DNA of 64,000 nucleotides from Piromyces finnis finn. Its lineage: Eukaryota > Fungi > Neocallimastigomycota. Of this stretch, positions 383-59,064 are shown in pieces (position 1 is the first letter of the stretch; the number at the start of each line of letters is the position of its first letter). The notes below the pieces were generated by a model that saw nothing but the letters and a program-made list of their open reading frames with translations, ran no database searches and was not told the origin of the DNA. The position numbers and the translations under genes are program-made. The stretch covers positions 248,001 through 312,000 of the forward strand of contig MCFH01000048.1 of the NCBI GenBank assembly GCA_002104945.1, written 5' to 3'.

Positions 383-398
383 TTTCTTAAAATTTGTA

Positions 399-1020
399 TG
401 TAAGAATAAATACTTATTATTTATTCTTAGTATTAAACATTACAAATAATTTATTTAGTTAATAATCATTAATCCATTAGATTATATTAATATATTTATT
501 TATTATTATAGTTATTTGTTAAGTTAAATATTGTAAATATTTATTTAGTTAATAATTATTCATTCGCTATATTAGATTAATTAATTTATTTAATTATGTA
601 TTTATACATTCATTTATATATATACTTGTATTATAAAAGATAAAACACATACTAATTACATTAATAATATTATACAACTATATATTAGTATGTAATAGGA
701 AATCGGATATTAAGGTTTTACCCGTTATCAACGGTTTTACTTAATATTACGATGATTGGTATGATTAGAATATCAATCAAATAACTTTTTAGGTTTTTCT
801 TCTAGTCTTTTCCTAAAAAGATTCTTGTTAAGATTAGAATGTTCTTAGAAATTTTAATTTAATAGAATAAAACATATAAATAGTACTCTTGAGTTCGATT
901 TGAGAAATCAAGAGTTATTATTATAAGATTAATTATAATAAATAACTTTATACAAAATAATAAGTAATAAAATAAATATTAAAAAAAAAACTATTAAATA
1001 CACAAAATAATTCTGATACA
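399..1020. mobile_element. Diverged family-E-like solo LTR
   Basis: Runs TGTAAG...GATACA. The internal block (aggtttttcttctag...cttttcctaaa...gaaatcaagagttatt) is homologous to family E. It starts 16 bp upstream of tRNA-Trp. Confidence 0.55.
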
Positions 1021-1022
1021 TT

Positions 1023-1851
1023 TGGTTTTGTTTATTATAATTTCTTATAATAAACTCATTAAGTTAAGTTTCTAATTTTACCTTTATTTTCACATTTTAA
1101 TAATAGTTTATATTATTAATTTAAAGCTAATAATTATTACATTGTAGTTAAGGAACCAACAAATAAAGTTATTCTTGTCATAATTAATGATTATGACCTA
1201 ATCCATTATTGTTCCTAAATGTATGAAAACTTTACAATATTCTTATTTGTAAATTAATGTATACACTTAAATTATATTTAAAATTATTAATAATTATTTT
1301 TATTGAACTTAAATTTTATTTTATTAAACTTAAAAATTAATTTAGTAATAATAATATATTGAAAATTATAGTTTATTGAACTTTTAGTTTAATTTATCAA
1401 GTTAATGAATTTTTATTAATTAAAATTATGAATAATATTTCTGTAAAATAGTAAAATTCTTTAGTTAAATATATTTAAAGTAAACTTTTAATGTATGTTA
1501 ATCAATTTAATAATATGTATAAATATTTATTATAATAGTAATGTAATTTTATTATTCATTTAAAAGTAATTTAAAGACTAAAATTAATGTAAATAATTAA
1601 AGACTAATTCTTTTAATTAACACTACTTAATTTTTTACAAAAAGTATAAAAAGGTGTATATTATAAGAATTAGAGAATATACAGATATTTTTATTTTTAT
1701 TTTTATTTTATTTTATAATTTTATATTAATATCTTAATAAAACAATTTTATTAATAAAACAATTTTTCTTATTTCATTTTAATATTATTTTTGAGTATTA
1801 ATAAATTTATTAATATTTTATAAATAAAAGTAAATTCCTCGAACCGTAACA
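1023..1851. mobile_element. Putative solo LTR (family J)
   Basis: TG...CA-bounded segment between two other LTRs, with 2-nt and 1-nt spacers. The end GAACCGTAACA resembles GAACCGTAGCA at ~51794. Confidence 0.3.
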
Positions 1852-1852
1852 T

Positions 1853-2656
1853 TGTGATAAATAATGAAATTAATAAATATAAAATTATTATTAAACCTGA
1901 TTTTTAAGTTAATCCTAAAAGTAACTTAAAACAAGTTATAGTTTAATTAAGTACTTTACCAAAATTCTTAAATAAAATTAATCCTAAACACTGCATATAT
2001 TTTGATTATTGAAAGAAAATAATAAACTTTAATTAATCGAGATCAAAATATATAACTCTTGTTAAATTAATTGTTAAATTAAATATTTAATAACTTCGTT
2101 AGTAAATTACACTTTAAAAGTAAACAAATATAATAATTCATGTTATAAAATAATATAATTAAACACCTTTATTAAAACATTAAAAATAATTATTACTTTA
2201 ATTAATTGTAAAATAAACAACTTTTTATATTCTTTAACTTTTAATTATTTCTTTTATTGTTATTTCTAATTACTTTTATTGTAAATAGTTATTAATTTTA
2301 TTGTTTTAATGTAAATAGTTTAAATTTAAAAGAAAATATAAATACATGTAAATATTCTTATTTTAATCATTATTATTATTATTAATAAAGAAATATTATA
2401 TAGTTAGATTAATATTTTATAATTTTAATAATCACTTTTATACTTAAATAAATAAAATTTTAAATATTTAAATATTAGAAAAACAAGTGTTTCTAATAAA
2501 ACAATTTAGTGTTTTAACAAAACAATTTTATTAATTTTTATAAAAACGATCTTAAATCTTAATCAATATAACTTATATAGTTATAACAAAAGATATAATA
2601 TAATAATCACTTTTTGAAGTAAAATTCAAAATTAAGATTATTATCAAATTATATCA
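1853..2656. mobile_element. Solo LTR family F (TGTGATAAAT...TTATATCA)
   Basis: Has TG...CA ends. Inverted copies lie at 5900-6655 (partial), 28611-29460 and 37840-~38640. Confidence 0.75.
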
Positions 2657-56616: not shown

Positions 56617-56954
56617 ACAATGACACAAGTTTAAATATACCTTAATTCTAAATAAAATTAGAAAGTGGTATAATTGTGTGTAATTGAATGATTTATTTTT
56701 ACTTGCTCATTCTACAAGTTTATATAATTATTAAATATAATTTAAAGTTTTAAAAACATCTTGTTTTATAATATTAGTTTATTTATTTAAAATAAATGTA
56801 TAATACATCTCGCTATGTATTATAAAAAAAAATATATTAATTTATTATTTTATTATTAAAATATTCTAATTTTCCTGGCTAATCAATAACAGTTTTTAAA
56901 ATAATATTTTCTATTTCTATTTATAATAAATAATTAAATTTATAAATTATAAAT

Positions 56955-57207
56955 TAATAATAATAACAATAATAATAATAATAATAATAATAATAATAAT
57001 AATAAAATAATAATAATAATAATAATAATAATAATAATAATAATAATAATAATAATAATAATAATAATAATAATAATAATAATAATAATAATAATAATAA
57101 TAATATAATAATAATAATAATAATAATAATAATAATAATAATAATAATAATAATAATAATAATAATAATAATAATAATAATAATAATAATAATAATAATA
57201 ACAATAA
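56955..57207. repeat. (AAT)n microsatellite in a G/M chimeric LTR (56621-~57721)
   Basis: ~250 bp with a few interruptions; it explains the poly-L and poly-I ORFs. Confidence 0.95.
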
Positions 57208-58554
57208 TTAAAATACAGATAAAAATTAAAATATTTAACATGTATAAAATTATTAAATTAAAAATTATAAATGTAAACTTTTGTTTATTTAATTGTTTAT
57301 TTATTTTTAAATTAAATAGTTTATATTTGTTTATAATTATACTTTAAAATAATAGTTTTGTATAAAATAGTAATAGAAAATGTTCTTTTTAAAATTGTTC
57401 CTAATAATCCAGTAAAATTAGATAATAATATTAAATTTTATTAAAATAATAGTTGTGATTATATTTACATACATTCAAGATGTATTAAACAATAACATAT
57501 ATATATTTAATAATACAAGAGTTATTAAATATTAAAACTTTATAATTAAATAAAATAATTTTATATTTTAAACTAACAAAGACTTGCAAATGAACAAGTA
57601 TAAAAATCATTTATTCTATTTTTATTTTCTTATTTATTTTTATTTATTAAATTTTAGATACAAATATTATCACTTTCTATATTCATTTATAGAATTAAGA
57701 TAATATTCTTATTGTATTAAAATGATAACGGATTGGTAGTTATATTACAACTTTTTAAACTACTTCTTCTGTTACCTTATATTGTTTTATCTCGACAGCT
57801 ATTATACGAGTTTTAACAATATCTACTTGTTTTATTAATTTATTTTATTTTACTTTATAATATTTATAGTTTTATTATTTAATAATATAAAAATGATGCG
57901 TTATAAAATAAAATATTATAATGCTTTTATTTATTTTGAGGTTGTGGTAATAAGGAATTATGCTGAAATAATATATTCCAGTTATTAATAATTATAAGAT
58001 ATAGTTATTTATTTATTTATTTATTATTATTATTATTATTATTATTATATAAACAAAATAAGCCTTTTATTATTATTAAATATTTATCTTTATTTATTAA
58101 AATATATTATAATTAGTATTTATTCATTTATTTATTATTAATAATACATTTTTAAATAATTATCTTCCTTATACAAATAAACTATTCATTCAATAATAAT
58201 ATTACTAACTAAAAATATTACTAAAATTCTTCTCACTTATTATTTTATTATATCTTATTACCTTTGGAACTTAATTATAAAATCAAGAACATCATTTTAA
58301 TTATTTAATTATTAATTATATTTATATTAGTACATAATCAATAAATTTATTTAAAAGTAAAAAAGGAAAAAAAAAAAAGGCAAAATAAGATAAAAAAAAA
58401 ATCAATTTCAAAAGATTAAATTTTTTTTTATTAATTTTATATTAATTAATTTCATTATTAATTAAAGTTATTATTAATTTATTATTATCTTAACCCTTAT
58501 GCGAATTGACCTAGAGTTTATGCCAAAAATAATATTTTCTGTTCGCCACACAAA

Positions 58555-59051
58555 TGACACACGTTCAAATATACCTTAATTCTAAATAAGCTTAGAAAGT
58601 GGTATATTTGTGTGTAATTGAATGATTTATTTTTACTTGCTCATTCTACAAGTTTATATAATTATTAAATATAATTTAAAGTTTTAAAAACACATCTTGT
58701 TTTATAATATTAGTTTATTTATTTAAAATAAATGTATAATACATCTCGCTATGTATTATAAAAAAAATATATATTAATTTATTATAATTTTAAAATATTC
58801 TAATTTTCCTGGCTAATTAGTAACAATCTTTAAAAATAATATTTTCTATTTCTATTTATAATAAATAATTACATTTAAGTTTGTTTATAAACAAAAGTTG
58901 TTTATATTTTACATTTTTAAAATTTAATTAAACATTTATATTTTATATTATTTTGATTATTTACTATTATTTTAATTTATATTAAGTTTATATAATCTTA
59001 AAATCAGCTATTCTATTAATTCATTATTTATAAATTTCATTCTTTATCACA
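58555..59051. mobile_element. Solo LTR family G
   Basis: Near-identical to 5400-5897; ends 13 bp upstream of tRNA-Ser. Confidence 0.85.
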
Positions 59052-59064
59052 AAAAAAAGTGTAA

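What the first reader, a model, noticed from the sequence alone, without database searches (positions are those of the whole stretch)
383..59064. Position-specific LTR insertion 13 bp upstream of tRNA genes by several unrelated LTR families
Distance from tRNA base 1 to the nearest LTR terminus: Ser 22578 is 13 bp (element 1), Trp 41483 is 13 (family H), Arg 43337 is 13 (family E), Ser 59065 is 13 (family G), Gly 29473 is 12 (family F, decayed end), Gly 30150 is 15 (TG at 30166) and Trp 382 is 16 (E-like). No insertion sits upstream of the second gene of a dimer. This fixed spacing is seen directly. It parallels Ty3 (TFIIIB-directed, at the Pol III start site), Dictyostelium DGLT-A and S. japonicus Tj1, which are established. 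That at least five distinct families share it here, one being a chromodomain-bearing self-priming element, is inferred, and I do not recall it being described in early-diverging fungi.
Basis: partly seen in the sequence, partly recalled or inferred. Interest (0 to 1): 0.92.

Follow-up and report, generated by a model that had tools for sequence, protein, structure and literature searches.

The report
LTR retrotransposons targeting tRNA gene starts
In this very AT-rich genome, probably of an anaerobic gut fungus, at least ten families of LTR retrotransposons have repeatedly inserted 11-16 bases ahead of tRNA genes, as yeast Ty3 does, which extends a known "safe landing site" strategy to an early-diverging fungus.

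Summary
All ten tRNA genes lie at the stated coordinates. Each of the seven first-in-unit tRNAs has an LTR terminus 13-16 nt upstream: Ser22578 13, Trp41483 13, Arg43337 15, Ser59065 15, Gly30150 15, Trp382 16, Gly29473 about 14-17 (decayed end).

In 50 further loci of the same genome, 23 of 35 non-redundant upstream contexts carry an intact LTR end at 11-16 nt. Repeat end-points are enriched 4-6 fold there and are absent at the same distance downstream.

Complete solo LTRs of different families sit head to tail with 2-6 nt spacers, for example N|F|P|H|H|13 nt|tRNA-Trp. Segmental duplication cannot explain that.

Pol genes next to tRNAs are only 30-55% identical, and primers differ (self-priming in A; tRNA-type in J and N). 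Element 1 is self-priming and has a divergent chromodomain. The canonical chromodomain belongs to a chromovirus nested inside it. The E-type element has none.

The best reading is Ty3/Tj1/DGLT-A-like integration guided by the Pol III complex. That mechanism is inferred, not tested.

It is a new member of a known kind. I found no report for Neocallimastigomycota. A second exact site near -66 also exists. Earlier notes of this scan describe the same stacks elsewhere in this genome.

The parts
311..382 (-). tRNA-Trp(CCA). The 16-nt leader is 383-398.
   Evidence: The locus is paralogous to Trp 41483: homology 1-395 vs 41866-41470 stops exactly 13 nt upstream.
399..1141 (.). Solo LTR of family T1 (E-like, 743 bp, TG..CA). 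It is the youngest layer of the stack upstream of Trp 382. J (1144-1851), F (1855-2656) and A (2659-4157) follow, with 2-3 nt spacers.
   Evidence: Perfect 5-bp target duplication TTGTA on both sides. Other copies are in L012 and L013.
2659..4157 (-). Solo family-A LTR split by a nested family-C LTR (2712-3709), 53 nt from its end. Target duplication AAACC.
9029..22564 (-). Element 1: a full-length Ty3/gypsy element on the minus strand. Its LTRs (9029-9524 and 22069-22564) are 100% identical. Its U3 end lies 13 nt from tRNA-Ser 22578, and it is transcribed away from the tRNA.
   Evidence: gag-PR-RT-RH-IN ORF at 9546-15041. Polypurine tract next to 9526. Self-priming 11-nt primer site. Target duplication CAAAG/AAAAG (4 of 5), or a perfect 4-bp AAAG if the LTR is taken as 497 nt.
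15041..21714 (+). Chromovirus nested in the gag region of element 1. LTRs of 834 bp, a canonical Pfam chromodomain, self-priming. It is not positioned relative to the tRNA (864 nt away).
   Evidence: Perfect 5-bp duplication GTCCA.
8343..9018 (+). Family-E LTR that was next to tRNA-Ser before element 1 arrived. A 10-nt spacer (9019-9028) separates it from element 1.
   Evidence: Its end sequence is the same as the one upstream of tRNA-Arg 43337.
22578..22742 (+). tRNA-Ser(GCT)-tRNA-Met(CAT) dimer with an 8-nt spacer.
28611..29458 (+). Family-F LTR with a decayed CA end, about 14-17 nt upstream of the tRNA-Gly(TCC)-tRNA-Thr dimer at 29473-29622.
   Evidence: Intact F ends lie 14 nt from tRNA-Gly in L003.
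30001..30150 (-). Inverted second copy of the Gly-Thr dimer.
30166..30216 (.). A 51-nt terminal fragment of an unnamed LTR, 15 nt upstream of tRNA-Gly 30150. The rest of that LTR continues after 31348.
30217..31348 (+). Solo family-C LTR (1132 bp). Its TG end lies 66 nt upstream of tRNA-Gly 30150 (the second landing site). Target duplication ATAAT.
37214..41469 (+). Stack of five complete solo LTRs: N 37214-37834, F 37840-38641, P 38647-39241, H 39247-40360, H 40365-41469. Spacers are 4-5 nt. The 13-nt leader and tRNA-Trp 41483-41554 follow.
   Evidence: The 4-nt flanks match on both sides of every unit (CAAA, AAAA, AAAA, AAAT, AAAT).
43264..43337 (-). tRNA-Arg(TCT). The 15-nt leader is 43338-43352.
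43353..43402 (.). The terminal 50 nt of a family-E LTR. The rest of this LTR lies at 45595-46244. It is separated by family Q (43403-44461) and family C (44469-45600), both inserted at the second site.
58555..59049 (+). Family-G solo LTR (496 bp), 15 nt upstream of tRNA-Ser(GCT) 59065-59146.
   Evidence: Its 4-nt flanks are CAAA/CAAA.

Best explanation
These are independent, repeated integrations of Ty3/gypsy-type LTR retrotransposons. They are aimed at the start region of Pol III-transcribed tRNA genes.

The integrase joins the cDNA within a 4-5 bp staggered cut 9-16 nt upstream of the mature tRNA 5' end. This is presumably at or just upstream of the Pol III start site. The gene itself survives.

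Each new arrival lands between the previous LTR and the tRNA. Older copies, mostly reduced to solo LTRs, are pushed outward and form ordered stacks.

The most likely guide is the Pol III initiation complex assembled on the A and B boxes (TFIIIC, then TFIIIB), as shown for Ty3.

Shown here: the position, the recurrence, the independence of events, the target duplications and the diversity of the elements. Inferred: what the integrase actually binds.
For: 1. Position. LTR ends lie 13-16 nt from all seven first-gene tRNAs of the window. In 35 non-redundant contexts, 23 intact ends lie at 11-16 nt. End-points are enriched upstream only.

2. Independence.
- Paralogous Trp loci share the same leader but carry T1, H or N LTRs at 16, 13 and 15 nt.
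- Family A sits 11-13 nt from Ser, Arg, Gly, Met and a Glu pseudogene. It occurs in both orientations at identical leaders, as in L017 versus L015.
- Genome-wide, all five A-type ends found within 1-30 nt of tRNA-Arg(TCT) are at 11-12 nt.

3. Stacks. Complete LTRs of four or more families are separated by 2-6 nt spacers.

4. Target duplications: TTGTA (T1), GTCCA, AAACC, ATAAT, and 4-nt matches for N, F, P, H, H and G.

5. Polarity. About 87% of the window is LTR material (summed from the annotations), and all of it lies on the 5' side of tRNA units. The 378-bp and 1.7-kb intervals between convergent tRNAs have none.

6. A tRNA-like target. Five distinct A ends abut a tRNA-like unit with an A box, a B box and a T-run. 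ARAGORN and Rfam do not call it a tRNA. The inferred distance is the same. This points to promoter elements rather than tRNA identity.

7. Elements. They are Ty3/gypsy with integrases homologous to Ty3 integrase: E 2.6e-28 for element 1 and 2.7e-49 for the E-type. Element 1 and the C element carry an SH3-like domain followed by a divergent chromodomain, the same tandem that contacts TBP and Brf1 in Ty3 (PMC8632968).
Against: - No binding, Pol III start-site or de novo integration data exist for this organism.
- The E-type integrase has no chromodomain at all, yet it uses the same site. The Ty3 'chromodomain ruler' therefore cannot be the general mechanism here.
- Other Pol III genes could not be tested. 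The assembly holds only five 5S copies, all linked to rDNA. The two I could read have no LTR upstream, and no TTACA-type LTR end lies within 25 nt of any 5S gene genome-wide.
- Several loci are duplicates of one another: L006/L010, L003/L011, L007-L009.
- A few tRNAs (Leu-CAA, one Arg, one Met) have no LTR at the site.
Confidence: 0.82

Rival explanations
1. One or a few ancestral insertions next to a tRNA were copied together with the tRNA by segmental duplication, so the fixed spacing is inherited rather than targeted.
For: Some loci are clear duplicates with identical LTR and leader: L006/L010/L037, L003/L011, L007/L008/L009, L016/L017. A convergent Arg-Trp module recurs in many loci.
Against: After duplicates are collapsed, 23 distinct contexts remain, involving at least ten LTR families and eight tRNA species. 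Paralogous tRNAs with the same leader carry different families or opposite orientations. Stacks show successive events at a single tRNA. Element 1 has 100% identical LTRs and its own target duplication.
Confidence: 0.03
2. Integration is random or only regionally biased, and selection removes every insertion except those in a harmless spot just upstream of tRNA genes.
For: The genome contains LTR material elsewhere, for example the chromovirus nested in element 1 and a copia fragment at 48072-50928.
Against: Selection cannot give a 6-nt window with family-specific offsets: A at 11-13, E/T1 at 15-16. It also cannot explain a second exact site at 65-67 nt, since positions in between would be equally harmless. 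LTR debris is tolerated for tens of kb, yet it is always stacked from the same point.
Confidence: 0.05
3. The integrases recognise DNA, not the Pol III complex. The target would be either an A-rich motif or the ends of resident LTRs, and tRNA proximity would be secondary.
For: Leaders and spacers are A-rich. New LTRs usually land next to an older LTR end.
Against: A/T-rich sequence is everywhere in a genome of about 15% GC. Leaders differ between tRNA families. The distance is constant to the tRNA, not to the neighbouring LTR. For example, the T1 duplication overlaps the first 4 nt of J. Family C sits 66 nt from the tRNA whether the leader is 14, 15 or 22 nt long. A ends also abut a tRNA-like unit with A and B boxes.
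Confidence: 0.08

Closest known systems
Ty3 of Saccharomyces cerevisiae (Metaviridae)
   Same: A Ty3/gypsy element. It inserts a few bp upstream of the Pol III start, which is about 15 bp before the mature tRNA 5' end. It uses many tRNA species, in both orientations, and leaves the gene intact (PMC5006619, PMC5911963). Its integrase has an SH3-like C-terminal domain plus a vestigial chromodomain that contacts TBP and Brf1 (PMC8632968). Foldseek's best match for the element 1 tail is that chain, 7q5b_C.
   Different: Ty3 uses a tRNA primer and is a single family. Here there are many families from several deep lineages. Element 1 is self-priming. The tails show no sequence similarity beyond the SH3 domain. 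One lineage has no chromodomain. The integrase-TFIIIB contact is untested here.
Tj1 (and Tj2-10) of Schizosaccharomyces japonicus
   Same: Self-priming Ty3/gypsy elements that integrate 5-11 bp upstream of mature tRNA 5' ends. Ten families cluster with tRNA genes (PMC4600332).
   Different: Tj1 inserts in one fixed orientation, co-directional with the tRNA. Family A here is mostly divergent but occurs both ways. The host is a different phylum. The insertion window is 11-16 nt.
DGLT-A, Skipper-1 and Skipper-2 of dictyostelids
   Same: DGLT-A lacks a chromodomain and sits about 15 bp (13-33) upstream of tRNAs. Relatives with a canonical chromodomain go elsewhere, and those with a diverged chromodomain go near tRNAs (PMC5006619). 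The same three-way pattern appears here: E has no chromodomain, A and C have a divergent one, and the nested chromovirus and the L017 element have a canonical one.
   Different: Amoebozoa rather than fungi. DGLT-A uses a tRNA primer. Skipper-2 lands downstream of tRNAs.
Tf1/Tf2 of S. pombe and other self-priming chromovirus-like elements
   Same: An 11-nt primer site complementary to the start of the transcript. Tf2-1-type SH3 domain.
   Different: Tf1 targets Pol II promoters, not tRNA genes.
TRE5-A (a non-LTR element) of Dictyostelium
   Same: It uses a second, more distant fixed position upstream of tRNAs, about 48-50 bp. This resembles the site at 65-67 nt used here by families C, Q and D.
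   Different: TRE5-A is a LINE-like element. Here the users are LTR elements with a strictly fixed orientation.

Membership tests
Ty3/gypsy (Metaviridae) LTR retrotransposons | Domain order PR-RT-RNase H-IN in one polyprotein | tested here: met
   Pfam on element 1, L014, L019 and the nested element
Ty3/gypsy (Metaviridae) LTR retrotransposons | Direct LTRs ending TG..CA, a polypurine tract, a primer site, and a short target duplication | tested here: met
   The duplication is 4-5 bp.
Pol III-targeted (Ty3-like) integration class | Insertions confined to a window of a few bp within about 20 bp upstream of the mature tRNA 5' end, at many different tRNA species | tested here: met
   11-16 nt at Ser, Arg, Gly, Trp, Met and Glu genes
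Pol III-targeted (Ty3-like) integration class | Other Pol III genes (5S, U6 and so on) are also targeted | tested here: inconclusive
   Only five rDNA-linked 5S copies exist, with no LTR seen next to them. A tRNA-like unit with A and B boxes is targeted.
Pol III-targeted (Ty3-like) integration class | Integrase binds TFIIIB (Brf1/TBP), and integration depends on it | not testable with these tools
   The Brf1 gene (contig C169) is split by introns, so no unaltered sequence could be given to the complex predictor.
Chromoviruses (Ty3/gypsy with an integrase chromodomain) | Recognisable chromodomain at the integrase C-terminus | tested here: inconclusive
   Element 1 and the C element: no Pfam hit even at E 10. 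Against that, hhalign gives 91.5% probability, and the fold is three strands plus a helix matching HP1, Rhino and CBX chromodomains. The model's alignment included canonical chromodomains. The E-type has no tail at all. The nested element and the L017 element have a canonical chromodomain.
Self-priming (Tf1-like) retrotransposons | A primer site directly after the 5' LTR that is complementary to about 11 nt inside the LTR (the transcript start) | tested here: met
   11 of 11 nt at offset 0 in element 1 (LTR position 212), the C element (898), the nested chromovirus (556) and the L007 copy. J and N instead have TGG-type tRNA primer sites.

The most novel reading that the evidence does not exclude
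This genome holds a guild of at least ten LTR families from several deep Ty3/gypsy lineages. Some are self-priming and some use a tRNA primer. Their integrase chromodomain is divergent, canonical or absent.

The families divide one Pol III gene between two exact landing sites. Families A, E, T1, F, G, H, J, N and P use 11-16 nt upstream. The long-LTR families C, Q and D use 65-67 nt upstream, always with the U3 end toward the tRNA.

That would imply two different molecular rulers reading the same Pol III complex. It would also imply that tRNA targeting was gained or kept independently of the chromodomain.
Probability: 0.6. Interest if true: 0.75.

Novelty: new member of a known kind. Interest (0 to 1): 0.6.

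Why it matters
Targeting the Pol III start site is a textbook case of a mobile element choosing a safe site. It has been studied mechanistically only in Ty3.

This genome offers many natural variants side by side. The integrase tails are absent, divergent or canonical, the priming modes differ, and the landing offsets differ by a few bases. This makes the Ty3 "ruler" model directly comparable across lineages.

The ordered stacks are a chronological record of invasions at single sites. If the host is an anaerobic gut fungus, a group with very few genetic tools, a tRNA-directed integrase could also point to safe-harbour integration sites.

Tried and rejected
- Genome sampling. A later pattern search still returned 30 loci. 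The next search returned none. A full genome-wide histogram was therefore not possible.
- Structure. A single-sequence model of the element 1 integrase tail was useless, with pLDDT 35. It was redone with a 25-row alignment.
- Pfam found no chromodomain in the A or C tails, even at E 10.
- An exact-protein look-up of the element 1 ORF found nothing. The organism is inferred only from base composition, from a Piromyces sp. E2 protein clustered with a relative, and from my memory of assembly statistics.
- 5S genes as a second Pol III target: five rDNA-linked copies, none with an LTR.
- Complex prediction of integrase with Brf1 or TBP was not attempted. Brf1 is split by introns, and spliced sequences are not admissible.
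- My first library entry for family E (7841-9018) turned out to be two E LTRs head to head. The real E LTR is about 680-870 bp.
- I first read the peak at 61-70 nt as mosaic LTRs. I rejected that once full-length C in L019 and the constant 66-nt distance were seen.
- The target duplication could not be fixed at 4 or 5 bp for the TGA..TCA families, because the flanks are A-rich.
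Full report
**Setting.** The window is G000:C176:248001-312000 of a 56.5-Mb, 232-contig assembly. GC content is 12-20% outside coding parts. They form seven transcription units:
- Trp 382(-)
- Ser-Met 22578(+)
- Gly-Thr 29473(+)
- Gly-Thr 30150(-)
- Trp 41483(+)
- Arg 43337(-)
- Ser 59065(+)

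A relative of the element 1 integrase clusters with a Piromyces sp. E2 protein. That, the base composition and my memory of assembly statistics suggest an anaerobic gut fungus. This is not verified.

**The observation.** I defined LTR families from self-comparison. I took real copies as a library: A, C, D, E, F, G, H, J, N, P, Q, T1 and the nested chromovirus LTR. The table gives the nt between the terminal CA and tRNA base 1.

| tRNA | Family | Distance (nt) |
|---|---|---|
| Ser22578 | A | 13 |
| Trp41483 | H | 13 |
| Arg43337 | E | 15 |
| Ser59065 | G | 15 |
| Gly30150 | 51-nt LTR end fragment | 15 |
| Trp382 | T1 | 16 |
| Gly29473 | F, decayed end | about 14-17 |

Other copies of E and G do not all have it. 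The spacing is thus a narrow window, not one fixed number.

**Beyond the window.** I fetched 20 loci centred on other tRNA genes. A later search for the family-A LTR end gave 30 more loci.
- In the window plus the first 20 loci, repeat end-points pile up at 9-16 nt upstream: 8.5 per nt at 9-12 and 5.75 per nt at 13-16, against about 1.3 background. Downstream, the 13-16 nt bin is empty.
- After duplicated loci are collapsed there are 35 first-gene contexts. In 23 of them an intact LTR-end signature lies at 11-16 nt (counts: 11 nt 3, 12 nt 4, 13 nt 3, 14 nt 5, 15 nt 5, 16 nt 3). Only two lie anywhere in 17-45 nt.
- About five further contexts have the same LTRs with decayed ends.
- Offsets are family-specific: A 11-13, J 13-16, E/T1 15-16, F/K/N/P 14-15.
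- Genome-wide, the 24-nt U3 end of family A occurs 228 times, with 0 in the reversed control.
- All five A-type ends that lie within 1-30 nt of a tRNA-Arg(TCT) are at 11 or 12 nt.

**Independence of events.**
- The two Trp loci of the window are duplicates whose homology stops 13 nt upstream. Beyond that point one carries T1 and the other H. A third paralogue (L018) carries N.
- Family A abuts Ser, Arg, Gly, two kinds of Met, and a Glu pseudogene. At identical leaders it occurs in opposite orientations, as in L017 versus L015.
- Complete solo LTRs are stacked with 2-6 nt spacers. Upstream of Trp 41483 the order is N, F, P, H, H, then the 13-nt leader. From Trp 382 outward it is T1, J, F, A.
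- A spacer of 4-6 nt means each arrival landed within about 1 nt of the previous one.
- Upstream of Ser 22578, element 1 lies between an older E LTR and the tRNA.
- Target duplications are perfect for T1 (TTGTA), the nested chromovirus (GTCCA), and C (AAACC, ATAAT). They are 4-nt perfect for N, F, P, H, H and G. For element 1 they are 4 of 5, or a perfect 4-bp AAAG.
- About 87% of the window is LTR material (summed from the annotations), all on the 5' side of tRNA units. The intervals between convergent tRNAs have none.
- Some sampled loci are plain duplicates: L006/L010, L003/L011, L007-L009. These were counted once.

**The elements.**
- Element 1 (9029-22564, minus strand) is a Ty3/gypsy element with identical LTRs and an 1831-aa gag-PR-RT-RH-IN ORF. 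Its gag region is interrupted by a chromovirus (15041-21714), which carries the only Pfam-detectable chromodomain of that stretch.
- Pol genes next to other tRNAs are diverse. Copies of element 1 (95-98% identical) occur in L007-L009 and L016.
- An E-type element (L014) is 43% identical to element 1. A full-length C element (L019) is 45% identical. J (L001) and N (L018) are only 22-35% identical to anything else.
- Element 1, C and the chromovirus each have 11 nt directly after the 5' LTR that are perfectly complementary to a site inside the LTR. This is the Tf1/Tj1 self-priming signature. J and N have TGG-type tRNA primer sites.
- A small tree rooted on the distant L020 element gives (A,(C,(E,(chromovirus, L017)))). 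The two families that land close to the tRNA are therefore not sisters. The root sits on a long branch and is tentative.

**Integrase tails.**
- Element 1 integrase aligns with Ty3 integrase through the SH3-like domain (E 2.6e-28). The E-type aligns better (E 2.7e-49).
- After the SH3 domain, element 1 and C have about 77 residues that Pfam does not recognise.
- A profile of these tails matches a profile of eleven Pfam-confirmed retroelement chromodomains at 91.5% probability, E 8.8e-7.
- With a 25-row alignment, the tail is modelled at pLDDT 86.5 as three strands plus a helix. Foldseek ranks the Ty3 integrase chain of the TFIIIB-bound intasome first, followed by Rhino, HP1 and CBX chromodomains at TM 0.75-0.84. 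The alignment contained canonical chromodomains, so the model is not independent evidence.
- The E-type ORF stops 11 residues after the SH3 domain, and its LTR starts about 15 nt later. It has no chromodomain.
- So the chromodomain contact that acts as a ruler in Ty3 (PMC8632968) may apply to A. It cannot be the only solution here.

**Mechanism.** The simplest account is integration guided by the Pol III initiation complex, as for Ty3 (PMC5911963, PMC8632968). Supporting points:
- Only the first gene of a dimer is approached.
- The distance is kept to the tRNA rather than to neighbouring LTRs.
- Five distinct A ends abut a tRNA-like unit at the same inferred distance. The unit has an A box, a B box and a T-run, but neither ARAGORN nor Rfam calls it a tRNA.

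I could not test 5S or other Pol III genes meaningfully. I could not test binding either, because the Brf1 gene is split by introns.

**Known relatives and novelty.** Ty3, Ty3p, Tj1, Tca8/beta, Tyl3, Ylt1, Tyl6 and DGLT-A all insert just upstream of tRNA genes (PMC5911963, PMC5006619, PMC4600332). Tj1 is also self-priming. The kind is therefore known.
- My searches found no report for Neocallimastigomycota or other early-diverging fungi.
- What is added here is the breadth: many families and several deep lineages sharing one window.
- The pattern of absent, divergent and canonical chromodomains echoes DGLT-A, Skipper-2 and Skipper-1.
- Earlier notes of this scan describe the same stacks on other pieces of this genome. 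I treated them as leads only.

**Seen in passing.** Families C, Q and D (LTRs of 1.0-1.2 kb) always have their TG (U3) end 65-67 nt upstream of a tRNA, about 50 nt inside whichever LTR sits next to the tRNA.
- Examples: 66 nt at 30217. 66 nt for the full-length C element in L019, which splits a P LTR with a 5-bp duplication. 22+44 = 66 nt in L003. 65 and 67 nt for Q in L006.
- At Arg 43337, Q and C are stacked at the same point inside one E LTR, whose remainder follows at 45595.

Noticed in passing
window 30217-31348, 2712-3709, 6656-7787, 43403-45600, 32131-33144, 36143-37157, 4213-5397; L019:824-8364; L003:3853-4897; L006:5204-6290: A second exact landing site. Families C, Q and D (LTRs of 1.0-1.2 kb) have their TG/U3 end 65-67 nt upstream of the tRNA, about 50 nt inside whichever LTR sits next to the tRNA. 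The orientation is always the same. They also stack on each other: at Arg 43337 the order is Q, then C, inside one E LTR. L019 holds a full-length C element with a 5-bp duplication.
   Followed up: yes
L021, L026, L033, L043, L050 (about 1525-1610 in each); also L017:9635-9901 and L004:~9100-9230: A repeated tRNA-like unit with an A box, a B box and a T-run. ARAGORN and Rfam do not call it a tRNA. Family-A LTR ends sit 8-11 nt before it, which is about 13 nt from its inferred base 1.
   Followed up: partly
window 15041-21714: A chromovirus with a canonical chromodomain and a self-priming site is nested in the gag region of element 1, with a perfect GTCCA duplication. It is not placed relative to the tRNA. 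A related LTR in L020 ends inside a tRNA-Glu gene, 28 nt before tRNA-Arg.
   Followed up: partly
window 7841-9018: Two family-E LTRs lie head to head, giving 50-nt terminal inverted repeats. At first sight this looks like a single 1178-bp LTR.
   Followed up: partly
window 5900-7837 and L016:9020-9895: A family-C LTR is flanked on one side by an F LTR lacking its last 46 nt, and on the other by the first 50 nt of a P LTR. This fits a deletion by recombination between two C copies that had inserted at the 65-67 nt site in successive layers. The F/C junction recurs in L016 with a different neighbour.
   Followed up: no
window 48072-50928: A Ty1/copia gag and integrase fragment lies on the minus strand, inside the LTR region between tRNA-Arg 43337 and tRNA-Ser 59065.
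   Followed up: no
window 56926-57153, 33947-34353, 28173-28242, 59594-59713; many loci: A roughly 50-nt AT-rich segment of the P LTR (positions about 514-562) is expanded into minisatellite-like arrays together with AAT repeats.
   Followed up: no
L007:4908-4990, and the same in L008 and L009: A tRNA-Glu pseudogene with an 11-nt D-arm deletion lies ahead of tRNA-Arg. A copy of element 1 sits about 12 nt upstream of this pseudogene.
   Followed up: partly
L013:1-1266, L005:9467-9585: The end of the large-subunit rRNA gene and a 5S gene lie within 4 kb of tRNA-Leu and tRNA-Arg. The assembly has only five 5S copies, spaced 8534 bp apart on contig C153.
   Followed up: partly
window 61722-62627: An ordinary G-protein alpha subunit gene (Pfam E 2e-124) lies just downstream of the last tRNA. 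Protein-coding DNA therefore resumes on the 3' side of the cluster.
   Followed up: no
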